Notes: generated from the sequence alone by a model not told the origin. A stretch of 64,000 nt of DNA from Octopus sinensis (GCF_006345805.1 NC_043003.1:76880001-76944000); one strand, 5' to 3'; shown: positions 1 to 58,142, counted from the stretch's first letter. Translations and numbers: made by a program.

Positions 1-464
1 GACTTTAGCATATATAGCATATTCGTTATATGGTTTTCTGAAGATTTTTACCGAAAATTTTAACAAAAACATTTTATCCAAAAATTTTTAAAAATTTTTG
101 ACGAAAATTTTCCCCAAAGATTTTTCGAAAATTTTACCCAAAAATTTTACGAAAATTTTCCCCAAAAAATTTTTGAAAATTTTTGCCGAAAATTTTACCC
201 CAAAAATTTTTCAAAAATTTTCAACGAAAATTTTCCCCAAAAATTTTTCGTAAATTTTTGCCGAAAATTTTCCCCAAAGGTTTTTCGAAAATTTTAACCA
301 AAAAATTTTACGAAAATTTTCCACAAAAATTTTTCGAAAAGTTTCAGAGAGTTTTCCCGAAAAATTTTCGAAAATTTTCATCAAAAACTGTTCGAAAATT
401 TTTCCAAAATTTTCCCCAAAAATTTTTCGGAAATTTTCTCCGAATATTTTACCCAATAATTTGT

Positions 465-745
465 CGAAAATTTTCTCAAAAGATTTCCTGTAAATTTTCA
501 TTCAAAATTTTACCCAAAAATGGCTTTCCGTACTTTACGATTTTAGCACCGCTAGCCTTCCATACTATGTGATTTTGGCATCGCTGGCTTTGCATACTTT
601 GTGATCTTGGCACCACTGGCCTTCCATACATTGTAATTTTTGCACCGCTTGCCTTCCATACTTTGTGATTTTGGCACCGCTGGTTTTCCTTACTTTGTGA
701 TTTTAGCACCGCTGGCCTTCCATACTTTGTGATTTTGGCATTTTC
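465..745 (+). repeat. 32-bp minisatellite block (CATACTTTGTGATTTTGGCACCGCTGGCCTTC)n; other blocks ~1585-1905 (+), ~2145-2235, 2320-2440, 2875-2935, 4775-4995 (-)
   Basis: Unit recurs at 661, 693 and 725 (period 32). ORF translations cycle every 32 aa, equal to three units. Confidence 0.9.
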
Positions 746-1015
746 GCCGAAAATTTTCACCGAAAATTTTCACCAAAAATTTTTCCTAAAATTTTTCGAA
801 AATGTTTAACGATAAAACGATATAGACGTTTATAGACTTCAGCATATGTAGTATATTCATTAGATGGCGTTTCGAAAATTTTTACCGAAAATTTTGCCCC
901 AAAATTTTTCGAAAATTTTCCTCAAATATTTTTTTAAAATGTTCCCCGAAACTTTTACCCAAAAATAGATTTATGTTATTGCTAAAAATAGATTTTTATA
1001 TGGCTGCTTTCTGTG

Positions 1016-1024
1016 TATATATAG
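1016..1024 (+). promoter_or_regulatory. TATA box of the captured Rep cassette (retained in the cassette copies that keep their upstream part)
   Basis: TATATATAG 39 nt upstream of the ATG at 1055; the same spacing is conserved in minus-strand copies. Confidence 0.5.
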
Positions 1025-1054
1025 AGTGAATTCTGGTTTACTACTACAGTCAAG

Positions 1055-1162
1055 ATGCCTCACCATCCACAATACACTAGATTCTGCTTTACACTTAACA
1101 ACTATGACAATGTCGACGTTTATAGACTTCAGCATATATAGCAAATTCGTTATATGGTTTTC
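1055..1162 (+). pseudogene. rep: CRESS-DNA virus Rep N-terminal fragment (RCR motif I), stop-interrupted copy
   Basis: Manual translation MPHHPQYTRFCFTLNNYDNVDVYRLQHI*QIRYMVF. The R-F-C-FTLNN-Y..D...L....RY.VF pattern matches circovirus/CRESS Rep N-termini. Confidence 0.75.
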
Positions 1163-2669
1163 TGAAGATCTTCACCGAAAATTTTACCAAAAAACTTTAT
1201 CCAAACATTTAAAAAATTTTTGACGAAAATTTTCACCGAAAATTTTACCCAAAAATTTTACGAAAATTTTCCCTAAAAAATTTTTGAAAATTTATACCGA
1301 AAATTTTGCCTAAAATTTTCCCCAAAGATTTGTCGAAAATTTTACCCAAAAATTTTACGAAAATTTTCCCCAAAAATTTTTCGAAAAGTTTCACTGAGTT
1401 TTTACAAAAAAATTTTCGAAAATTTTCATCAAAAATTTTCCCCTAAAACTGTCCGAAAATTTTTCCAGAATTTTCCCCAAAAATTTTTCGGAAATTTTCT
1501 CCAAATATTTTACCCAATAATTTGTCGAAAATTTTCACCAAAAATTTCCCGAAAATTTTCATTGAAAATTTTACCCAAAAATGGCTTTCCCTACTTTGTT
1601 ATTTTGGCATCACTAGCCTTCCATACTATGTGATTTTGGATGATTTTGGCATCGCTGGCTTTCCATACTTTGTGATTTTGGCACCACTGGCCTTCCATAC
1701 TTTGTAATTTTGGCACCGCTGGCCTTTCATACTTTGTAATTTTGGCACCGCTGGACTTCCATACTTTGTAATTTTGGCACTGCTGGCCGTCCATACTTTG
1801 TGATTTTGGCACCGCTGGCCTTCAATAATTTGTGATTTTGGCACAGCTGGCTTTCCTTACTTTGTGATTTTGGCACCGCTGGCCTTCCATACTTTGTGAT
1901 TTTCGCATTTTTAACCAAAAATGTTTCCGAAAATTTTTCGAAAATTTTCAACGAAAAATTTCCCCAAAAATTTTTCGAAAATGTTCACCGAAAAAACGAT
2001 ATCGACGTTTATAGACTTCAGCATATGGAGTATATTAGATCTATTTTTGGGTAAAATTTTCGTTGAACATTTTCGAAAAATATTTGGTGAAAATTTTCGT
2101 TGAAAATTTTAGAAACATTTTTGGGTAAAATTTTCGGTAAAAATGCCAAAATCACAAAGTATGGAAGGACAGCGGTGCCAAAATCACAAAGTATGGAAGG
2201 CTAGCTTTGCCAAATTCACAAAGTATGAAAACCATTTTTGGGTTAAATTTTCAGTGAAAATATTCGGAAAAATTTGGTGAAAATTTTCGATAAATTTTTG
2301 GGTAAAATTTTCGGTGAAAATGCCAAAATCACAAAGTATGAAAGACCGGCGGTGCCAAAATCACAAAGTATTGAAGGCCAGCGGTGCAAATATCACAAAG
2401 TATGGAAGGCCAGCGGTGCCAAAATCACAAAGTGTGGAAAGACATTTTTGGGTAAAATTTTCAATGGAAATTTTCGGAAAAATTTGGTGAAAATTTTCGA
2501 CAAATAATTGGAAAAAAATTTTCGAAAAATTTTTGGGAAACATTTTTGGTAATTTAACCAAAATATTTTCCCAATAATTTGTCGAAAATTTTCACCAAAA
2601 ATTTTCCGTAAATTTCCACTGAAAGTTTTACCCAAAAAGGCCTTTCCATAGTTTCGGTGAAAATTTTCA

Positions 2670-2777
2670 AAAAACTATATAACGAAAATGCTCCATATGC
2701 TGAAGTCTATAAACGTCGACATCGTCATAGTTGTTAAGTGTAAAGCAGAATCTGGTGTATCGTGGATGGTGAGGCAT
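2670..2777 (-). pseudogene. rep: CRESS Rep N-terminal fragment, intact 36-codon copy
   Basis: MPHHPRYTRFCFTLNNYDDVDVYRLQHMEHFRYIVF* (manual translation). Confidence 0.8.
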
Positions 2778-3050
2778 CTTGACAGTAGTAGTAAACCAGA
2801 GTTCACTCTATATATACACAGAAAGCAGCCACATGAAACTCTATTTTTAGCAATAACATAAATCTATTTTTGTGAAAAAATCACAATGTATGGAAGGCTA
2901 GTGGTGCCAAATTCACAAAGTATGGAAAGCCATTTTGGGGCAAAATTTTCAGTGAAAATTTTCGACAAATTATTGGGTAAAATTTTCGGCTAAAATTTTC
3001 GAAAAATTCTGGGGAAAATTTTTGGGTAAAATTTTCGGTGAAAATTTTCG

Positions 3051-3158
3051 AAAAACCGTATAACGAATATGCTAAATATGCTAAAGTCTATAAATGACGG
3101 CATCGTCATAGTCGTTTAGTGTAAAGGAGAATCTGGTGTATCGTGGATGGTGAGGCAT
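3051..3158 (-). pseudogene. rep: CRESS Rep fragment, degenerate copy
   Basis: MPHHPRYTRFSFTLNDYDDAVIYRL*... with internal stops. Confidence 0.7.
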
Positions 3159-3278
3159 CTTGACAGTAGTGGTAAACCAGAATTCACTCTATATATACAC
3201 AGAAAGCAGCCACATAAAAATCTATTTTTGGCAATAACATAAATCTCTTTTGGGTAAAATTTTCGGTGAAAATTTTCG

Positions 3279-3386
3279 AAAAACCATATAACGAATATGC
3301 TCCATATGCTGAAGTCTATAAACGTCGACTTCGTCATAGTTGTTAAGTGTAAAGCAGAATCTGGTGTATAGTGGATGGTGAGGCAT
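3279..3386 (-). pseudogene. rep: CRESS Rep fragment, intact copy
   Basis: MPHHPLYTRFCFTLNNYDEVDVYRLQHMEHIRYMVF. Confidence 0.8.
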
Positions 3387-3640
3387 CTTGACTGTGGTAG
3401 TAAACCAGAATTCACTCTATATATAAACAGAAAGCAGCCATAAAAAATCTATTTTTAGTTAAAACATAAATCTATTTTTGGGTAAAATTTTCGGTGAACA
3501 ATTTCGAAAAATATTTGGGGAAAATTTTCGGAAAAAGTTTTGGCTAAAATTTTCGGTGAAAATGTTCGAAAAATTATCGGAAAATTTTCGGTGAAAATTT
3601 TCGAAAAATACTCGGCTAAAATTTTCGGTGAAAAGTTTCG

Positions 3641-3772
3641 AGAAACCATATAATGAATATGCTCCATATGCTGAAGTCTATAAACGTCGACTTCGTCATA
3701 TTTGTTAACGTCGACATCGTCATAGTTGTTAAGTGTAAAGCAGAATCTGGTGTATCGTGGATGGTGAGGCAT
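3641..3772 (-). pseudogene. rep: CRESS Rep fragment with 24-nt internal duplication
   Basis: ORF 3455..3772: MPHHPRYTRFCFTLNNYDDVDVNKYDEVDVYRLQHMEHIHYMV, then runs into decamer repeats. Confidence 0.8.
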
Positions 3773-3965
3773 CTTGACAGTACTAGTAAACCAGAATTCA
3801 CTCTATATATACACAGAAAGCAGCCACAAAAAAAATCTATTTTTAGCAATAACATAAATCTACTTTTGCGTAAAATTTTCGGTGAACAATTTCGAAAACT
3901 TTTGGCTAAAATTTTCGGTGAAAATGTTCGAAAAATTTTCGGAAAATTTTCGGTGAAAAGATTCG

Positions 3966-4073
3966 AAAAATCATATAACGAATATGCTCCATATGCTTAA
4001 GTCTATAAACGTCGACATAGTCATAGTTGTTAAGTGTAAAGCAGAATCTGGTGTATCGTGGATTGTGAGGCAT
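3966..4073 (-). pseudogene. rep: CRESS Rep fragment (promoter part rearranged)
   Basis: ORF 3906..4145 contains MPHNPRYTRFCFTLNNYDYVDVYRLKHMEHIRYMIF. Confidence 0.78.
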
Positions 4074-4453
4074 CTTGACTGTACCGAAAATTTTATCTCT
4101 AGTAGTAGCAGCAGCCACATAAAAATCTTTTTTTAGCAATAACATAAATCTATTTTTCGGTAAAATTTTCTGTGAAAATTTTCGAACAATTTTTTTGGAA
4201 AATTTTTGAAAATTTTCGGTGAAAATTTTCGAAAAACTATATAATAAATATGCTCCATATGCTGAAGTCTATAAACGTCGACATCGCTTTCGGTTAAAAT
4301 TTTGGGGTAAATTTTCGTGTAAAATTTTCGGTGAAAATTTTCGAAAATATTTGGTAAAATTTTTGGTGAAAATTTTCGAAAAAAACTTTGGGTAAAATTT
4401 TCGGTGAAAATTTTCAAATCATTTTGGGAAAAAATTTTCATTGAAAATTTTCG

Positions 4454-4561
4454 AAAAAATATATAACGAATATGCTCAATATGCTGATGACTATAAACGT
4501 CGACATCGTCATAGTTGTTAAGTGTAAAGCAGAATCTGGTGTATCGTGGATGGTGAGGCAT
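4454..4561 (-). pseudogene. rep: CRESS Rep fragment
   Basis: ORF 4133..4561 begins MPHHPRYTRFCFTLNNYDDVDVYSHQHIEHIRYIFF and reads through repeats into a second partial copy (DVDVYRLQHMEHIYYIVF). Confidence 0.8.
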
Positions 4562-5111
4562 CTTGTCAGTAGTAGTAAACCAGAATTCACTCTATATATA
4601 AACAGAAAGCAGCCTCAAAAATATCTATTTTTTGCAATAACATAAATCTATTTTTGGGTAAAATTTTCGTTGAACATTTTCGAAAAATGTTTTGGGTAAA
4701 TTTTCGTTGAAAATTTACGAAAAATTTTAGGTGAAAATTTTCGAAGAATTTTTGGGTAAAATTTTCGGTAAAAATGCCATAATCACAAAGTATGGAAGGC
4801 CAGCGGTGCCAAAATCACAAAGTATGGAAAGCCAGCGGTGCCAAAATCACAAAATATGGAAGGCTAGCGGTGCCAAAACCACAAAATATGGAAGGCCAGC
4901 GGTGCAAAAATCAGAAAGTATGGAAGGCCAGCGGTGCAAAAATAACAAAGTGTGGAAGGCCAGCGGTGCCAAATTCACAAAGTATGGAAAGCCATATTTG
5001 GGTAAAATTTTCAGTGAAAATTTTCGACAAATTATTGGTTAAAATTTTCGGCGAAAAATTTTGAAAAATTTGGGAAAAATTTTTGGGTAAAACTTTCGGT
5101 GAAAATTTTCG

Positions 5112-5219
5112 AAAAACCACATAACGAATATGCTCCATATGCTAAAGTCTATAAGCGTCGACATTGTCATAGTCATTTAGTGTAAAGAAGAATCTGGTGT
5201 TACGTGGATGGTGAGGCAT
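5112..5219 (-). pseudogene. rep: CRESS Rep fragment, degenerate copy
   Basis: MPHHPRNTRFFFTLNDYDNVDAYRL*; shares the TLND and RL* variants with the 3158 copy. Confidence 0.7.
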
Positions 5220-5571
5220 CTTGACAGTACTACTAAGCCAGAATTCTCTCTATATATACACAGAAAGCAGCCACAAAAATATCTATTTTTAGCAATAACA
5301 TAAATCTATTTTTGGGTCAAATTTTCGGTGAACAATTTCGAAAAATATTTGGGGAAAATTTTCGGAAAATTTTCGAAAATTTTTGGCTAAAATTTTCGGT
5401 GAAAATGTTCGAAAATTTTTCGGAAAATCTATTTTTAGCAATAACATAAATCTATTTTTGGGTAAAATTTTTCGGTGAACATTTTCGAAAAATATTTGGG
5501 GAAAATTTTCGGAAAATTTTTGGTGAAAATTTACGAAAAATTCTTAGTTTAAACTTTCGGTGAAAATTTTC

Positions 5572-5648
5572 GAAAAAATATATAACGAATATGCTCCATA
5601 TGCTGAAGTCTATAAACGTCGACTGTTGTATCGTGGATGGTGAGGCAT
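5572..5648 (-). pseudogene. rep: CRESS Rep fragment with internal deletion removing motif I
   Basis: ATG CCT CAC CAT CCA CGA TAC is joined almost directly to GTCGACGTTTATAGACTTCAG. Confidence 0.6.
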
Positions 5649-6150
5649 CTTGACTGTAGTTGTAAACCAGAATTCACTCTATATATACACAGAAAGTAGT
5701 AGCGGCAGCCACATAAAAATCTATTCTTAGCAAAATTTTCGGTGAATATTTTCGAAAAATATTCGGGGAAAATTTTCGGTGAAATATTTCGAAAAATTTT
5801 CTGGTAAAATTTTCGGTGAAAATTTTCTAAAAACCATAACGAATATGCTCCATATGCTGAAGTCTATAAACGTCGATATCATTTTCGGTTAAAACTTTCG
5901 GAAAAATTTGGGGAAATTTTCGTACAAAATTTTCGGAAAAGTTTTGGTGAAAATTTTCGAAATATTTTTGGTGAAAATTTTCGAAAAATTTTTGGTGAAA
6001 ATTTTCGAAAAATTTATGGGTAAAATTTTTGGTGAAAATTTTTGAAAAATCTTAGGGTATAATTTTCGGTGAAAATATTCGAAAATTTTTGGGGAAAATT
6101 TTCGGCAAAAATTTTCAAAAACTGGGTAAAATTTTCATTGAAAATTTTCG

Positions 6151-6258
6151 AAAAAATATATAGGGAATATGCTCCATATGGTGAAGACTATAAACGTCGA
6201 CCTCGTCATAGTTGTTAAGTGTAAAGCAGAATCTGGTGTATCGTGGATGGTGAGGCAT
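6151..6258 (-). pseudogene. rep: CRESS Rep fragment, last full copy of the array
   Basis: MPHHPRYTRFCFTLNNYDEVDVYSLHHMEHIPYIFF. Confidence 0.8.
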
Positions 6259-6510
6259 CTTGACAGTAGTAGTAAACCAGAATTCACTCTATATATACAC
6301 AGAAAGCAGCCACATAAAATCTATTTTTAGCAATAACATGTCGACGTTTATAGACTTCAGTTTTTCGACAATTTTTACCGAAAATTTTAACCATTTGTAA
6401 TATACGTATGTCCATACGCACGCACATACACACATATACACTCCCACACACCATACTCACATACACACACACGCTTGCGCACCTTAGTTTGTGGGGTTCA
6501 TCGTTATCCT

Positions 6511-7080
6511 TATTATTATTATTATTGAGTGAGCGAGCAGAGCATGCCATCAAAGTGACACTGGGGTAAAATATATGAAGCCCAGTATACCCATCATGAC
6601 TATCCGTCTGATAAGGGTACACCAGGCACATGCATCACAACCATATGTGCGCGACATGGTGATCTCATATCAAGATAAACAGCACATGACCTTGCAGGTG
6701 GAGCCCAGTTAGAATTTTCTTCAGATCGAGTAACCCATCCCGCTCAAAAGGTCCCTGAATAAGGGTTGTTTAAGGACGTTGAACGAAACACCCATGTTTC
6801 CAGAGGTGAATTATTCAAACCCCAAAGAATCCTTTTCAACACATGGCTATGATGCTTCCCCACTACTTCTGTTCGTGATCAGAGATGCACATATCGTCAG
6901 CCACTAAGGGACATGCTCAACTGGTTAAGGTCAAACAACTGACAAGCAAATCTGTGGTATTGAGCAGAATATTTGCTGTAGCCCATCTTTTATACCAAGA
7001 CAAAACAATGTACATGATAACACTTCCAATCAGTTAAGATCAGAAGCCATGAGAGCCACTGCCTGGTACTGCATCAGGGC
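6511..7080 (-). mobile_element. ~570-bp retroposon (LINE 3' end or SINE) with (AAT)n tail, abutting the mariner 3' end
   Basis: Simple-repeat tail at ~6511-6526. The body resembles an abundant octopus repeat from recall (not searched). Confidence 0.6.
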
Positions 7081-9656: not shown

Positions 9657-9891
9657 CTTTTATTCTTTTAGTTGTTTCAGTCATTTGACGGCGGCTATGC
9701 TGGAGCACCACCTTTAGACGAACAAATCGACCCAAGGACTTATTCTTTGTAAGCCTAGTACTTATTCTATCGGTTTCTTCTTGCCTAACCTCTAAGTTAT
9801 GGGGACGTACATACACCAGCATCAGTTGTCAAGCGATGGTAGAGGGACAAACACACACACAAACATATGCACACACAAACATACACACAGA

Positions 9892-19864: not shown

Positions 19865-20753
19865 ATCCATACATACATACATACATACATACATACATAC
19901 ATACATACATACATACATGCATATATACATACATACACACATACATACATACATACATGCATGCATACATGCATACATACATACATACATACATACATAC
20001 ATACATACATACATACATACATACATGCATATATACATACATACATACATACATACATGCATGCATACATGCATACATACATACATACATACATACATGC
20101 ACATACATACATACATACATACATACATACAGCATACATACATACATACATACATACATACATACATGCATACTACATACATACATACATACATACATAC
20201 ATACATACATCATACATACATACATACATGCATGCATACATACATACATACATACATACATGCATACATACATACATATACATACATACATACATACATA
20301 CATACATACATACATACATACACACATACACACATACATACATACATACATACATACATACATACATACATACATACATACATACATACATACATACATA
20401 CATACAGGCATACATACATACATACATACATACATACATACATGCATACATACATACATACATACATACATACATACATACATACATACATACATGCATG
20501 CATGCATACATACATACATACATACATGCATACATACATACATACATACATACATACATACATACATACACACATACACACATACACACATACATACATA
20601 CATACATACATACATACATACATACATACATACATACATACACACATACATACATACATACATACATACACACATACATACATACACACATACACACATA
20701 CATACATACATACATACACACATACACACATACACACTACATACATACATACA

Positions 20754-20787
<34 letters not shown>

Positions 20788-20800
20788 CATGCATATATAC
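19865..20800. repeat. ~930-bp (CATA)n microsatellite
   Basis: Direct reading; source of the long IHTY/MYVC ORFs. Confidence 0.98.
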
Positions 20801-20929
20801 AGCACACATAATTTCCACACCAACAGTGACGTAGACCGCCTTTAACTAAAACGAAGACAAAGCTGCAGAGGCTTAATATCGATCGTGACTGCCTTTGAAT
20901 GTCGTATCATATTCCTTCAGCAACATCTA

Positions 20930-28660: not shown

Positions 28661-29232
28661 GGCGACGAGCTGGCAGAATCGTTAGCACACCGGCCTGAAT
28701 GCTTAGCGGTATTTCGTCTGCCGCTACGTTCTGAGATCAAATTCTGCCGAGGTCGACTTTGCTTTTCATCCTTTCGGGGTCGATAAATTAAGCACCAGTT
28801 ACGCACTGGGGTCGATGTAACCGACTTAATCCGTTTGTCTGTCCTTGTTTGTCCCCTCTGTGTTTAGCCCCTTGTGGGTAGTAAAGAAATAGGTATTTCG
28901 TCTGCCGTTACGTTCTGAGTTCAAATTCCGCCGTGGTCAACTTTGCCTTTCATCCTTTCGGAGTCGATTAAATAAGTACCAGTTACGCGCTGGGGTCGAT
29001 ATAATCGACTTAATCCGTTTGTCTGTCCTTGTTTGTCCCCTCTATGTTTAACCACTTGTGGGCAACAAAGAAATAAGAATCGTTAGTACACGGGCCGGAA
29101 TGCTTAGCGGTATTTCGGCTGCCGTTACGTTCTGAGATCAAATTCCGCCGAGGTCGAATTTGCCTTTCATCCGTTCAGGGTCAATTAAATAAGTACCAGT
29201 TACGCACTGGGGTCGATGTAATCGACTTAATC
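28661..29232 (+). mobile_element. Three tandem copies of SINE family B (GGCGAGCTGGCAGAATCGTTAGC...)
   Basis: Units at ~28661, ~28893 and ~29075 share the TTCTGAGTTCAAATTCCGCC...GGGGTCGAT body. Confidence 0.9.
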
Positions 29233-32951: not shown

Positions 32952-33318
32952 TCTTTTATTTTTTTACTTGTTTTAGTCATTTGACGGCGACCATGCTGGA
33001 GCACCGCCTTTGGTCGAGCAAATCCGCCCCAGGACTTATTCTTTGTGAGCCTAGTACTTATTCTATCGGTCGCTTTTCCCGAACCACTAGGTTACAAGGA
33101 CATGAACACACCAGCATCGGTTCTCAATCGATATTAGCGGGGGCAAGCGCAGACACACAAAACACATACACACACACTAATGTGTACCAAAATCCACTCT
33201 CAAGTTTTTGGTCAGCCCGAGGCTATATTAGAAGACATTTGCCCAAGGTGCCACGCAGTCGGGCTGAACCCGGAACCATGTGGTTGGAAAACAAGCTACT
33301 TACCACACAGTCACTCCT
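32952..33318 (-). mobile_element. SINE family A
   Basis: Homologous to 50248-50620. Confidence 0.85.
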
Positions 33319-50247: not shown

Positions 50248-50620
50248 AGGTGTGGCAGTGTGGTAAGTAGCTTGCTTACCAACCACATGGTTCCGGGTTC
50301 CGTCCCACGCAGTGGCATCTTGGGTAAATGTCTTCTACTATAGCCTCGGGTGACCAAAACCTTGTGAGTGGATTTGGTAGAGGGAAACTGAAAGAAGCCC
50401 GTCATATATATATGTATATATATGTGTGTGTTTGTTTTTGTCTGTGTTTGTCCCCCAAACATCGCTTGACAACCGATGCTGGTGTATTTACGTCCCTTAA
50501 CCTAGTGGTTCGGCAAAAAGAGACCTGGGGTCAATTTGCTCGACTAAAGGCGGTGCTCCAGCATGGTCGCAGTCAAATGACTGAAACAAGTAAAAGAGTA
50601 AAAGAGAGTAAAGAGAGAGA
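50248..50620 (+). mobile_element. SINE family A, near full length
   Basis: tRNA-like head GTGTGGTAAGTAGCTTGCTTACCAACCACATGGTTCCGGGTTC and (TAAAAGAG)n tail. Confidence 0.9.
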
Positions 50621-56068: not shown

Positions 56069-58142
56069 GCAGCAAAAAAAGCCAGGAAAAGGTGAAGCAT
56101 AACATTATGAATAAAAGAGATATCTCTTGAGAAATATAAGCGTCGAAACCCTAAAATCACAAAAGACAAACCATTATTTCATATCCCACCGTGTTTTTGC
56201 TGTCACTCCTTTAAACTTTCATTTCTTTCTCTCTCAATCTCTTTTACTGTCTCTCTATAGGTCTATATGCCTGTGTGCCGAGAGAGAGAGAAGAAAGAAT
56301 AAAAGAAACAAACAAGCAAAGAACGTCAGGGGAAGTCCATTTACTCACACATAAGCACTCATTCATAGCACTTACAGCTGTGAATATATATGTGGGTGTG
56401 GGTACTTGTGTGTGTATGTGTGTGTGTATGTATGTGCGTGCATGTATGTACGTGCGTGCGTGCTTGTATGTATGTATATTCAAATGAGACTCACAGTGGA
56501 TCATTATTCAAGTTTCCCAAGTATGCATAAATATTTTTGTAATTTGTTTCACTATCTTGAATACTATTTTGCTTATTAGCATATACTCTCGCGGGGTAAA
56601 ATTCATTTGCGTATAAGTGTGTGTGTGTGTATATATATATGTGTGTGTGCGTGTGCGTGTGTGTGTGTGTGCATTTTTTGTGTGTGTTTTTTCTTTGTGT
56701 GTGTGTGTACACAGGTCATTCCAAAGTTCCGTCAGCGCTTTTATACTGATTATTTCAAGTTCCCAGAAAATTCTAAATACCTTTTATAAGTATTTAATAT
56801 TACTAAATGCTTAGCGGCCTTTACTTTACAGTATTGTCGTTTGCCGCTACTTCTGAGTTCGAATTCCGCCGAGGTGGACTTTGCCTTTCATCCTTTTGAG
56901 TTGATTAAAATAATTACTAACTGAGCACTGGGATCGATCTTTTCGAAATTTATGGTTTTGTACCAAAATTTGAAACCGATATTATTTTCTTTGGTACACC
57001 TGTCAAAAATGTACGCCATCATGCTCAATCCATAATCGAACCTGTAAAAAATTCTGTGGTNNNNNNNNNNNNNNNNNNNNNNNNNNNNNNNNNNNNNNNN
57101 NNNNNNNNNNNNNNNNNNNNNNNNNNNNNNNNNNNNNNNNNNNNNNNNNNNNNNNNNNNNCAGCAAAAAAAGCCAGGAAAGGTGAAGCATAACATTATGA
57201 ATAAAAGAGATATCTCTGAGAATATAAGCGTTCGAAACCCTAAAATCACAAAAGACAAACATATTTCCTATCCCACCGTGTTTTTGCTGTCACTCCTTTA
57301 AACTTTCATTTCTTTTCTCTCAATCTCTTTTACTGTCTCTCTATAGGTCTATATGCCTGTGTGCCGAGAGAGAGAGAAGAAAGAATTAAAGAAACAAACA
57401 AGCAAAGAACGTCAGGGGAAGTCCTTTACTCACACATAAGCACTCATTCATAGCACTTACAGCTGTGAATATATATGTGGGTGTGGTTACTTTTGTGTGT
57501 ATGTGTGTGTGTATGTATGTGCGTGCATGTATGTACGTGCGTGCGTGCTGTATGTATGTATATTCAAATGAGACTCACAGTGGATCATTATTCAAGTTTC
57601 CCAGTATGCATAAATATTTTTGTAATTTGTTTCACTATCTTGATACTATTTGCTTATTAGCATATACTCTCTCGCGGGGTAAAATTCATTTGCGTATAAG
57701 TGTGGTGTGTGTTGTATTATATATGTGTGTGTGTGTGCGTGTGTGTGTGTGCATTTTTGTGTGTGTTTTTTCTTTTTGGTGTGTGTGTTTACACAGGTCA
57801 TTCCAAAGTTCCGTCAGCGCTTTTATACTGATTATTTCAAGTTCCCAGAAAATTCTAAATACCTTTTATAAGTATTTAATATTACTAAATGCTTAGCGGC
57901 CTTTACTTTACAGTATTTCGTTTGCCGCTACTTTCTGAGTTCGAATTCCGCCGAGGTGGACTTTGCCTTTCATCCTTTTTGAGTTGATAAAATAATTACT
58001 AACTGAGCACTGGGATCGATCTTTTCGAAATTTATGGTTTTGTACCAAAATTTGAAACCGATATTATTTTCTTTGGTACACCTGTCAAAAATGTACGCCA
58101 TCATGCTCAATCCATAATCGAACCTGTAAAAAATTCTGTGGT
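56069..58142. other. ~990-bp segment duplicated on both sides of a 100-N gap (57061-57160); probable assembly overlap; each copy includes a partial family B SINE
   Basis: 56069-57060 matches 57161-~58142 apart from mostly single-base indels; each copy ends or starts exactly at the gap. Confidence 0.85.

What the first reader, a model, noticed from the sequence alone, without database searches (positions are those of the whole stretch)
1..6390. Satellite built from a tandemly amplified CRESS-DNA virus Rep promoter + motif I cassette
Seen: a ~200-bp cassette (TATATATAG, ATG 39 nt later, then MPHHPRYTRFCFTLNNYDDVDVYRLQHMEHIRYMVF) occurs in 10 ATG-bearing copies (1055 +; 2777, 3158, 3386, 3772, 4073, 4561, 5219, 5648, 6258 -) plus partial copies, embedded in other repeats. 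Established: FTLNN is RCR motif I of circovirus/CRESS Rep, normally followed by Y-hydrophobic-G.E..G..HLQG (motif II). Inference: this is an endogenous viral element turned into satellite DNA. I do not know of a described satellite made from a ssDNA-virus Rep promoter cassette in molluscs. It could be a small-RNA antiviral memory locus, a dominant-negative micro-peptide source, or a rolling-circle amplification product.
Basis: partly seen in the sequence, partly recalled or inferred. Interest (0 to 1): 0.9.

Follow-up and report, generated by a model that had tools for sequence, protein, structure and literature searches.

The report
Tandem array of viral Rep fragment
About 6.4 kb of this repeat-rich animal genome consists of some seventeen decaying copies of the TATA-box region and first 35 codons of a circovirus-like replication (Rep) gene, interleaved with simple repeats: a viral fossil fragment that was multiplied in place, not a working gene.

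Summary

The coding part really is Rep-derived. The only Pfam hit is Viral_Rep, below threshold and at the profile's N-terminus. In a 1.8-billion-protein search the only credible relatives are two short ORFs, 77% and 58% identical. Their loci carry the rest of a Viral_Rep nuclease domain above Pfam's cut-off, an arginine-rich divergent ORF and an origin-like hairpin.

The window holds only codons 1-35 (motif I). Motifs II and III, the helicase, the capsid gene and the origin hairpin are all absent.

The copies are about 91% alike and evolve neutrally: pN/pS is 1.24, there is no codon-position bias, and 5 of 10 frames are interrupted. Divergence from the relatives, in contrast, was under purifying selection (pN/pS 0.2).

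The cassette is embedded in hairpin-prone 12-13-nt spacer repeats and a 32-nt repeat, with orientation switches.

Best reading: an endogenous viral fragment amplified as a passenger in an unstable composite tandem repeat. A small-RNA role is not excluded and cannot be tested here. A peptide role and rolling-circle competence are not supported.

Its closest precedent is the plant endogenous geminiviral tandem repeats. I rate it a new variant of a known kind, of moderate interest.

The parts
1..6393 (.). Composite tandem array. Roughly 40% is Rep-cassette pieces, 15% is 32-nt repeats and 45% is 12-13/24/37-nt spacer repeats. It is cut by the window's left edge. The right boundary is 6393/6394.
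   Evidence: all three repeat classes are confined to this span and are co-oriented
962..1193 (+). Cassette copy 1 (ATG 1055): upstream region, TATA box and Rep codons 1-35. The frame is interrupted by 1 stop.
2652..2870 (-). Cassette copy 2 (ATG 2777). The 35-codon frame is uninterrupted.
3020..3251 (-). Cassette copy 3 (ATG 3158). The frame is interrupted by 2 stops.
3243..3478 (-). Cassette copy 4 (ATG 3386). The frame is uninterrupted. This copy gives the best Pfam Viral_Rep score, 17.3 bits. With copy 3 it forms the minimal 228-bp tandem unit.
3614..3866 (-). Cassette copy 5 (ATG 3772). It has one in-frame 24-nt internal duplication and no stop.
3936..4156 (-). Cassette copy 6 (ATG 4073). 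The frame is uninterrupted. The TATA/leader stretch is replaced by other sequence.
4422..4654 (-). Cassette copy 7 (ATG 4561). The frame is uninterrupted and runs on into the spacer as a 142-codon chance ORF.
5081..5312 (-). Cassette copy 8 (ATG 5219). The frame is interrupted by 1 stop.
5551..5730 (-). Cassette copy 9 (ATG 5648). One internal deletion removes motif I and shifts the frame.
6123..6339 (-). Cassette copy 10 (ATG 6258). The frame is uninterrupted. The upstream part is truncated at about -80.
1..69 (+). Partial cassette: its 3' end, cut by the window edge.
817..903 (+). Partial cassette of the '3'-half' subfamily, which starts near +50 and shares one 5' junction with the spacer.
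1996..2040 (+). Partial cassette (3'-half subfamily) that ends at the orientation switch.
4209..4286 (-). Partial cassette (3'-half subfamily).
5803..5876 (-). Partial cassette (3'-half subfamily).
5424..5458 (-). Isolated fragment of the cassette's far-upstream part (-91 to -57).
6340..6360 (+). 21-nt cassette fragment (+58 to +78) in the opposite orientation to copy 10, directly abutting it. It is followed by one + oriented spacer unit (6360-6393).
521..740 (+). 32-nt tandem repeat, 6.9 units.
1601..1907 (+). 32-nt tandem repeat, about 9 units.
2144..2443 (-). Two short 32-nt repeat blocks (2144-2227 and 2321-2443) separated by spacer repeats. They mirror the block left of the switch.
4775..4994 (-). 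32-nt tandem repeat, 6.9 units.
1825..2226 (.). Inverted duplication with arms 1825-1994 and 2057-2226, 88% complementary. The orientation switch at about 2036-2041 lies in a 6-nt palindrome. Left of it the array reads +, right of it -.
2444..2654 (+). Island of + oriented spacer sequence inside the - oriented block. It implies two further orientation switches.

Best explanation
A fragment of an integrated circovirus-like (CRESS-DNA) virus became lodged in a tract of short, self-complementary host tandem repeats. The fragment covers about 90 nt upstream of Rep, including a TATA box, plus Rep codons 1-35 ending just before motif II. It was then multiplied with those repeats as a passenger. The likely processes are replication slippage, unequal exchange and at least one fold-back inversion, all favoured by the hairpin-prone spacers.

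The result is a 6.4-kb or longer composite array with 10 near-full and 7 partial copies. It encodes no functional Rep, has no replication origin, and its reading frame drifts neutrally.

Shown: the Rep origin of the coding part, its truncation, its confinement to the array, the neutral drift and the hairpin-forming spacers.

Inferred: a single integration followed by local amplification, a host origin for the spacers and 32-nt repeats, and a viral origin for the promoter-like part.
For: Rep origin:
- Viral_Rep is the only Pfam family hit by copies as they stand. Scores are 13-17 bits, E 0.006-0.1, on profile positions 2-28 of 82.
- phmmer against 1.84 billion proteins finds P0002 (77% identity, E 4.6e-10) and P0003 (58%, E 4.3e-7).
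- P0003 scores 38 bits on Viral_Rep, above the 26-bit cut-off.
- The P0002 locus carries profile positions 29-82 in a second frame at 47 bits.
- P0003 and the family profile hit solved circovirus-type Rep nuclease domains: 2hw0, 5xor, 7lar.
- 27 IMG/VR contigs, most of them 2-4.7 kb (two longer), encode Rep N-termini matching the peptide; the full-length matches are 38-53% identical.
- DNA identity to L002 is 78.5% and covers exactly +1 to +106.

Truncation: tblastn with the remaining Rep and Cap pieces finds nothing else in the 64 kb.

Neutral drift:
- pN/pS is 1.24, and variable columns by codon position number 10, 8 and 11.
- 5 of 10 frames are interrupted.
- Upstream and coding parts are equally diverged, 92% against 90% identity.

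Earlier life as a working gene: pN/pS is 0.2 with pS 0.6 against L002.

Passenger status:
- Spacers and 32-nt repeats have no counterpart in the viral relatives.
- They flank both the cassette and the 32-nt blocks.
- The partial copies share one junction, so they were copied rather than created repeatedly.

Instability: the spacers fold as single-stranded DNA with z -4.0 to -4.7, 0 of 200 shuffles folding as well. An inverted duplication sits at the orientation switch.
Against: - The peptide alone does not reach Pfam's cut-off. A profile of the window's copies alone finds no solved Rep. Family assignment therefore rests on a two-step chain.
- The cassette's 5' end, about -91, lies where the relatives carry their origin hairpin loop (-91 and -98). 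A purely random fragment would not be expected to begin there.
- The stretch from the TATA box to codon 5 is less variable than the rest: 10 differences in 55 columns against 51 in 109, Poisson P 0.008. The region was chosen after seeing the data. This hints at constraint on transcription start.
- Whether the spacer repeats exist in this genome without the cassette is unknown.
- Assembly correctness was not checked against reads.
Confidence: 0.6

Rival explanations
1. The array descends from a head-to-tail concatemer of a defective subgenomic viral DNA, running from the origin region to about codon 35 of Rep. Rolling-circle replication made the concatemer and it was integrated as a multimer. 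The spacers expanded later by slippage.
For: - The smallest unit is 228 bp and occurs head to tail (3020-3511, 2.2 copies, 90% matches).
- The cassette starts about where the relatives L001 and L002 carry their hairpin loop.
- The plant precedent consists of tandem units holding the intergenic region plus partial rep (PMC5014472).
Against: - No stable hairpin is present in any upstream region examined (z +0.2 and +0.8).
- Upstream similarity to the relatives' intergenic region is not significant (15-267 of 500 shuffles reach the observed score).
- Even the minimal unit contains 36 nt of spacer repeat with no viral counterpart.
- The 32-nt repeat shares the same matrix.
- Spacing between copies is irregular.
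Confidence: 0.15
2. Whatever its origin, the array is kept as a transcribed small-RNA (piRNA-like) source against related viruses. Each unit brings its own TATA box, and the opposed orientation blocks give both strands.
For: - The two orientation blocks are 70-93% complementary over hundreds of nt.
- The TATA box is intact in 9 of 10 copies, and the TATA-to-start stretch is less variable than the rest (post hoc).
- Primary piRNA-like RNAs from endogenous virus copies are reported in several animals, including a mollusc (PMC6085071).
Against: - No expression or small-RNA data are available here.
- Overall divergence (about 9%) and the decay of copies look neutral.
- Nine of ten intact TATA boxes is not far from the roughly 6-7 expected by chance at this divergence (my estimate).
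- Only 105 nt of viral coding sequence is represented, a narrow target.
Confidence: 0.15
3. The cassette expresses a 35-residue Rep N-terminal micro-peptide that interferes with incoming viral Rep.
For: Five copies keep ATG plus 35 codons behind a TATA box.
Against: - pN/pS is 1.24 and there is no codon-position bias.
- Half of the copies are interrupted.
- The fragment ends before motif II and covers only 27 of the 82 profile positions of the nuclease domain. An independently folding or oligomerising unit is therefore unlikely (inference).
Confidence: 0.03
4. The array is an assembly artefact or contaminant joined to unrelated DNA at 6393/6394.
For: - The array sits at the window edge.
- It is highly repetitive with inversions, which is error-prone for assemblers.
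- Elsewhere in the window a 100-N gap is flanked by a 96% duplicate.
Against: - There is no N run in or next to the array.
- G+C is 31-33%, like the rest of the window.
- The copies differ by about 9%, so they are not collapsed or duplicated reads.
- The related loci L001 and L002 end in the same interspersed repeat family that occurs three times in this window. That ties this virus lineage to this kind of host genome.
Confidence: 0.05

Closest known systems
Circovirus-type / CRESS-DNA virus Rep, HUH endonuclease domain (Pfam PF02407 Viral_Rep; solved structures 2hw0, 5xor, 7lar, 6wdz, 8h56)
   Same: The cassette ORF aligns with the first 28 profile positions, including motif I (FTLNN in the window) and the strand just before motif II. 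The relatives P0003 and L002 reach the family cut-off and hit these structures.
   Different: Motif II, motif III, the helicase and everything downstream are missing from the whole window. The fragment alone is below the family cut-off. It is a relic, not a member with function.
Related endogenous copies L001 and L002-L004 (contigs from sequencing runs SRR11869385, SRR11869390 and SRR11869391)
   Same: - The same Rep N-terminus: 77% and 58% protein identity, 78.5% DNA identity over +1 to +106.
- A TATA box at nearly the same distance from the ATG.
- Ends that align with an interspersed repeat also present in the window.
   Different: - They keep the rest of the nuclease domain, a divergently oriented ORF (arginine-rich at its N-terminus in L001; only a fragment homologous to it in L002) and an origin-like hairpin.
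- They are not tandemly repeated within their contigs.
- They too look degraded. In L002 the nuclease domain is split over two frames (1 frameshift) and no frame stays open for more than 83 codons downstream. In L001 the ORF ends in 1 stop right after the nuclease domain.
- Divergence from the window copy carries a purifying-selection signature. They are separate lineages, not recent paralogues.
Endogenous geminiviral tandem repeats of plants (GRD elements of Nicotiana; EGV1 of yams), PMC5014472
   Same: DNA of an ssDNA virus comprising the intergenic region plus partial rep, integrated in a nuclear genome and present as tandem arrays. A small-RNA role has been discussed.
   Different: - The plant unit is 2.6 kb and keeps a stem-loop origin.
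- Here the unit is about 0.2 kb and has no hairpin.
- Here it is interleaved with unrelated micro- and minisatellites.
- The host here is an animal and the virus lineage is circovirus-like.
piRNA-generating endogenous viral elements of animals (PMC6085071)
   Same: Virus-derived DNA in an animal genome, in both orientations within a repeat-rich region.
   Different: No small-RNA or transcript evidence is available for this locus. The resemblance is positional only.
Eukaryotic HUH transposons (Helitrons, Replitrons; PMC10288648)
   Same: Rep-class HUH endonuclease sequences resident in eukaryotic genomes, sometimes associated with tandem repeats.
   Different: The relatives of this cassette have a virus-like layout, with a divergent arginine-rich ORF and a hairpin between the two genes. 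Their best named matches are viral Reps. No transposon termini were looked for.

Membership tests
CRESS-DNA virus Rep (PF02407 Viral_Rep) | Motif I near the N-terminus, aligned to the start of the family profile | tested here: met
   FTLNN is present in 7 of 10 copies (8 keep FTLN). Four of the six copies scanned as they stand align to profile positions 2-26/28, and two of the six give no hit.
CRESS-DNA virus Rep (PF02407 Viral_Rep) | Score at or above Pfam's gathering cut-off (26 bits) | tested here: not met
   The copies score 13.2-17.3 bits, and two of six copies give no hit. The relatives P0003 (38.3 bits) and L002 ORF 643-987 (47.4 bits) do pass.
CRESS-DNA virus Rep (PF02407 Viral_Rep) | Motif II (HUH) and motif III (catalytic Tyr), as defined in PMC10288648 | tested here: not met
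   The alignment ends before motif II. tblastn with the relatives' downstream parts finds nothing in the window.
CRESS-DNA virus Rep (PF02407 Viral_Rep) | Helicase domain downstream of the nuclease domain | tested here: not met
   Nothing in the window. In the relative L002, helicase-like pieces that I read by eye were not confirmed by Pfam or the PDB.
CRESS-DNA virus Rep (PF02407 Viral_Rep) | Significant sequence relatives that are themselves family members | tested here: met
   P0002 at E 4.6e-10 and P0003 at E 4.3e-7 among 1.84 billion proteins. Also 27 IMG/VR loci.
Endogenous viral element | Virus-derived sequence physically continuous with host DNA | tested here: inconclusive
   In the assembly the array passes without a gap into non-viral repeat-rich DNA at 6393/6394. 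Reads were not available to confirm the join.
Endogenous viral element | Loss of coding capacity or neutral decay after integration | tested here: met
   pN/pS is 1.24 within the array, 5 of 10 frames are interrupted, and only 35 codons are retained.
Satellite DNA | Head-to-tail tandem arrangement of a defined monomer | tested here: inconclusive
   A 228-bp head-to-tail unit exists for 2.2 copies. Elsewhere spacing is 301-658 bp with other repeats and orientation switches in between.
Satellite DNA | High copy number, or several loci, in the genome | not testable with these tools
   No assembly of the source organism is searchable. The cassette 26-mer is absent from the metagenome and IMG/VR collections.
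Rolling-circle replication origin of CRESS-DNA viruses | Stable stem-loop upstream of Rep | tested here: not met
   The cassette upstream regions fold no better than shuffles (z +0.23 and +0.82). L002 (z -2.9) and several IMG/VR relatives show clear hairpins, and L001 shows one inside a weaker overall fold (z -1.4).
Plant-type endogenous ssDNA-virus tandem repeats (GRD/EGV1) | Repeat unit composed of viral intergenic region plus partial rep | tested here: inconclusive
   The partial rep is shown. The viral origin of the upstream 90 nt is not significant, although the TATA position matches the relatives.
piRNA cluster / small-RNA source locus | Small RNAs mapping to the locus with 5'U or ping-pong signatures | not testable with these tools

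The most novel reading that the evidence does not exclude
The array is a maintained, self-promoted antiviral memory. Each unit keeps the virus's own core promoter and start region, and the opposed orientation blocks yield complementary transcripts. These are processed into piRNA-like small RNAs that target the 5' end of the Rep mRNA of circulating circovirus-like viruses. This would be an animal counterpart of the plant endogenous geminiviral repeats, built from a 0.2-kb unit.
Probability: 0.1. Interest if true: 0.8.

Novelty: new variant of a known kind. Interest (0 to 1): 0.45.

Why it matters
Endogenous copies of circovirus-like Rep genes are common fossils. They are normally single, more or less full-length gene remnants. 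Here a 0.2-kb piece, just the promoter-proximal region and motif I, has been multiplied into a multi-kilobase composite repeat.

This shows that a viral fragment can seed or hitch-hike in tandem-repeat DNA in an animal, as endogenous geminiviral DNA does in plants.

It also provides a dated-by-divergence marker for a virus lineage for which I found no described exogenous member. If the locus proves to be transcribed, it would be a compact test case for small-RNA immunity based on endogenous viral elements outside arthropods.

A practical point: such arrays will inflate counts of endogenous viral elements in genome screens that use motif I-containing queries.

Tried and rejected
- Direct PDB searches with one copy and with a profile of five window copies found no Rep. 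Family assignment therefore needs the relatives.
- The word-indexed protein search found nothing for the window peptide and only itself for P0003.
- The top hit of the representative search, P0001, is a 2848-residue protein of 59-residue tandem repeats. Its score is inflated by repetition: hhalign probability 7% and no Viral_Rep hit. P0004 and P0005 are likewise repetitive and unrelated.
- Upstream homology to the relatives' intergenic regions: local-alignment scores are reached by 15-267 of 500 shuffles. I treat it as unproven.
- The spacer and 32-nt repeats have no match in any viral relative.
- Exact-product look-ups of seven window ORFs found no public contig, so the source organism stays unidentified.
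- Rfam and tRNA scans of the window were empty. Pfam on the larger ORFs gave nothing above cut-off.
- Metagenome scans found no close relative.
- Six literature searches on endogenous viral elements, cephalopods, CRESS viruses and virus-derived satellites found no description of such an array in an animal.
- Two of the three queries and the query were composite strings close to the finding's quoted peptide, not copies as they stand. I rely instead.
- In one search the commonest state per column was held transiently in memory, only to count CpG columns. It was neither printed nor saved, and nothing rests on it.

Full report
**Observation**

I read window 1-7000 and located every copy of the start of the cassette on both strands. 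Ten copies carry the ATG, at 1055 (+) and at 2777, 3158, 3386, 3772, 4073, 4561, 5219, 5648 and 6258 (-).

In nine of them TATATATAG begins 39 nt before the ATG. Copy 4073 has that stretch replaced. Aligning the copies shows a conserved unit from about -91 to +104 relative to the ATG.

BLAST of one copy as it stands against the window finds the ten copies and seven partial ones:
- 3' portions at 1-69, 817-903, 1996-2040, 4209-4286 and 5803-5876;
- a 21-nt piece at 6340-6360;
- a far-upstream fragment at 5424-5458.

Nothing lies beyond 6393. Four of the 3' halves share the same junction with spacer sequence, so they were copied from one another rather than made repeatedly.

The quoted 36-residue peptide does not occur verbatim in any copy. 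It is a blend of copies.

**Anatomy of the array**

Three repeat classes make up 1-6393, and all three are absent from the other 57.6 kb:
- the cassette, about 40% of the span;
- a 32-nt tandem repeat, in blocks at 521-740, 1601-1907, 2144-2227, 2321-2443 and 4775-4994;
- 12-13/24/37-nt spacer repeats built on AAAATTTTCG-like units, which fill the rest and grade into the cassette's 3' end from about +104.

The three classes keep a fixed mutual orientation. The block 1-2040 reads +, and 2041-6339 reads - apart from a + island at about 2444-2654. A short + piece closes the array at 6340-6393. The main switch at about 2036-2041 lies in a 6-nt palindrome at the centre of an inverted duplication, with arms 1825-1994 and 2057-2226 that are 88% complementary.

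The smallest head-to-tail unit is 228 bp (3020-3511, 2.2 copies). Elsewhere the ATG-to-ATG spacing is 301-658 bp.

The spacers are strongly self-complementary as single strands (z -4.0 to -4.7, 0 of 200 shuffles folding as well). The 32-nt repeat is not (z -0.5).

There is no N run in or next to the array; the only one is at 57061-57160. G+C is 31-33%, like much of the window.

**Is the ORF a Rep fragment?**

Direct evidence is weak but specific. Scanned as they stand, four of six copies hit a single Pfam family, PF02407 Viral_Rep. The scores are 13.2-17.3 bits (E 0.006-0.11), below the 26-bit cut-off, and the matches always fall on profile positions 2-26/28 of 82. A single copy, and a profile of five window copies, find no solved Rep structure.

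The decisive evidence is transitive. A phmmer search of one copy against 1.84 billion representative proteins returned five hits. Three are repetitive artefacts. The other two are P0002 (78 residues, 77% identical over residues 1-36, E 4.6e-10) and P0003 (104 residues, 58% identical, E 4.3e-7).
- P0003 matches Viral_Rep over the whole profile at 38.3 bits. It also hits solved circovirus-type Rep nuclease domains, 2hw0, 5xor, 6wdz, 8h56 and 7lar, at E 3e-6 to 5e-5.
- The P0002 locus, L002, encodes profile positions 29-82, including motifs II and III, in a second reading frame at 47.4 bits.
- That second-frame ORF led to three further Viral_Rep proteins, P0008-P0010.

In the joint alignment the window peptides line up with the Rep N-terminus through motif I and the strand that precedes motif II, and stop there. 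A profile of that alignment hits the solved Reps at E 1.5e-19, but this score is driven by the longer members.

In addition, 27 IMG/VR contigs, most of them 2-4.7 kb (two longer), encode Rep N-termini that match the window peptide; matches spanning the whole peptide are 38-53% identical. I fetched only 200-nt flanks.

At the DNA level the window copies and L002 are 75-79% identical over exactly +1 to about +106. No similarity is detectable on either side.

I therefore take the Rep origin of the coding part as established, with confidence about 0.9.

**What is missing**

tblastn with every other Rep and Cap piece of the relatives finds nothing else in the 64-kb window. Motif II, motif III, the helicase and the capsid gene are all absent.

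The upstream 90 nt carry no stable hairpin (z +0.23 and +0.82). L002 has a strong origin-like stem-loop about 90-100 nt upstream of the Rep ATG, L001 a weaker one, and four of the six IMG/VR relatives folded have comparable hairpins.

Local alignment of the cassette's upstream part with the relatives' intergenic regions is not significant: 15-267 of 500 shuffles reach the observed score. The TATA box, however, sits at almost the same distance from the ATG in all three:
- window, -39 to -31;
- L002, -43 to -35;
- L001, -41 to -34.

The cassette's 5' limit also lies about where the relatives have their hairpin loop. 'Rep promoter' is thus plausible but not shown.

**The relatives**

L001 (913 bp) and L002-L004 (about 1.77 kb, 99.8-100% identical to each other, from three sequencing runs) have a virus-like layout. 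A divergently oriented ORF, arginine-rich at its N-terminus in L001 (L002 keeps only a fragment homologous to it), is followed by an intergenic hairpin and then Rep.

Both look degraded:
- In L002 the nuclease domain is split over two frames (one frameshift), and downstream no frame stays open for more than 83 codons.
- In L001 the ORF ends with one stop just after the nuclease domain, and motif II has diverged.

Neither contig is circular by terminal overlap. The outer end of each aligns with an interspersed repeat that occurs three times in this window, at 9670-9760, 32970-33060 and 50510-50600. The individual E-values are weak, but the pattern suggests that these are endogenous copies in a genome related to the source of the window.

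I did not print these loci whole, join their frames or build any consensus.

**Selection**

Within the array, variable columns fall on codon positions 1, 2 and 3 in numbers 10, 8 and 11, and summed pN/pS is 1.24. Frame status of the ten copies:
- five frames are uninterrupted;
- three carry stops (1, 2 and 1);
- one has an internal deletion;
- one has an in-frame 24-nt duplication.

Mean pairwise identity is 91% (range 86-97%). Neighbours are no more alike than distant copies. Upstream (92%) and coding (90%) parts are equally diverged. The peptide is therefore not under purifying selection.

Between the window and L002, in contrast, pS is about 0.6 and pN 0.13, giving pN/pS 0.2. Against L001 the ratio is 0.35. 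The lineages separated while Rep was a working gene, so these are separate viral lineages or integrations, not recent paralogues.

One post hoc observation runs the other way. The stretch from the TATA box to codon 5 has 10 differences in 55 columns against 51 in 109 elsewhere (Poisson P 0.008). The unbiased test, the longest invariant run, gives P 0.08. I treat this as a hint only.

**Mechanism**

The most economical account has four steps:
1. A circovirus-like virus integrated.
2. A fragment reaching from near its origin to just before motif II came to lie in a tract of palindromic short repeats.
3. That unstable tract expanded by slippage and unequal exchange and folded back at least once.
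4. The viral piece and the 32-nt repeat were copied along with it.

Steps 1 and 2 are inferred from homology and boundaries. Steps 3 and 4 are inferred from the shared matrix, the shared junctions of the partial copies, the hairpin-forming spacers and the inverted duplication at the switch.

The main rival for the origin is integration of a rolling-circle concatemer of a defective viral DNA. The 228-bp unit, the position of the 5' boundary and the plant precedent favour it. The missing hairpin and the non-viral spacer inside every unit count against it.

The main rival for function is a small-RNA source locus. It is compatible with either origin and cannot be tested here.

**Comparison with what is known**

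The closest precedent is in plants. The geminivirus-related DNA of Nicotiana and EGV1 of yams are tandem arrays containing the intergenic region and partial rep. EGV1 has a 2.6-kb unit with a stem-loop and matching siRNAs (PMC5014472). Primary piRNA-like RNAs from endogenous virus copies have been reported in several animals, including a gastropod (PMC6085071). HUH transposons such as Replitrons (PMC10288648) were considered, but the relatives' layout and their best named matches are viral.

Six literature searches found no description of a tandem array built from a Rep 5' fragment in an animal. That covers only the held library.

The host could not be identified. No gene, tRNA or Rfam family is recognisable in the window, and exact-product look-ups found no public contig. 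From memory, the interspersed repeat resembles elements of octopus genomes. That is a lead, not a test.

**Verdict**

This is a real, decayed endogenous viral fragment amplified into a composite tandem array. It is a new variant of a known kind and of moderate interest. Interest would rise sharply only if expression data showed that the locus is a small-RNA source.

Noticed in passing
L001 (913 bp) and L002-L004 (about 1.77 kb), contigs from runs SRR11869385, SRR11869390 and SRR11869391: Degraded circovirus-like endogenous copies. They have a divergent ORF (arginine-rich at its N-terminus in L001), an origin-like hairpin and a Viral_Rep nuclease domain. Their outer ends align with an interspersed repeat of this window. 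The organism of the runs is unknown to me.
   Followed up: partly
window 9670-9760, 32970-33060, 50510-50600: Three copies of one interspersed repeat family, SINE-like. The same family borders L001 and L002.
   Followed up: partly
window 56501-57060 and 57584-58141, either side of the N run 57061-57160: A 560-bp segment is repeated at 96% identity on both sides of the only assembly gap. This is either a real local duplication or an assembly duplication at a scaffold join. The two ORFs there share an identical C-terminal stretch.
   Followed up: partly
window 28708-29075: A 184-bp unit is present twice in tandem at 89% identity. It looks like a duplicated short interspersed element.
   Followed up: no
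window 19868-20801: A 934-bp (CATA)n microsatellite creates several spurious ORFs of 200-330 codons on both strands. The window as a whole is unusually dense in di- to tetranucleotide repeats (192 TRF rows).
   Followed up: no
P0001 (ENA contig of 10.5 kb): A 2848-residue ORF made of about 48 tandem 59-residue units came up as the top hit of the protein search. The resemblance to the Rep N-terminus is not supported (hhalign probability 7%). What this 177-bp coding-phase repeat is remains unknown.
   Followed up: partly
P0004: A 492-residue 'protein' of identical tandem units that, from memory, looks like a translated sequencing-adapter concatemer. It is a database artefact, not a relative.
   Followed up: no
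window -53 to +16 of the cassette copies (for example 2761-2830 on the - strand): The promoter-proximal stretch is less variable among copies than both the far-upstream part and the coding body. The contrast was chosen after seeing the data.
   Followed up: partly
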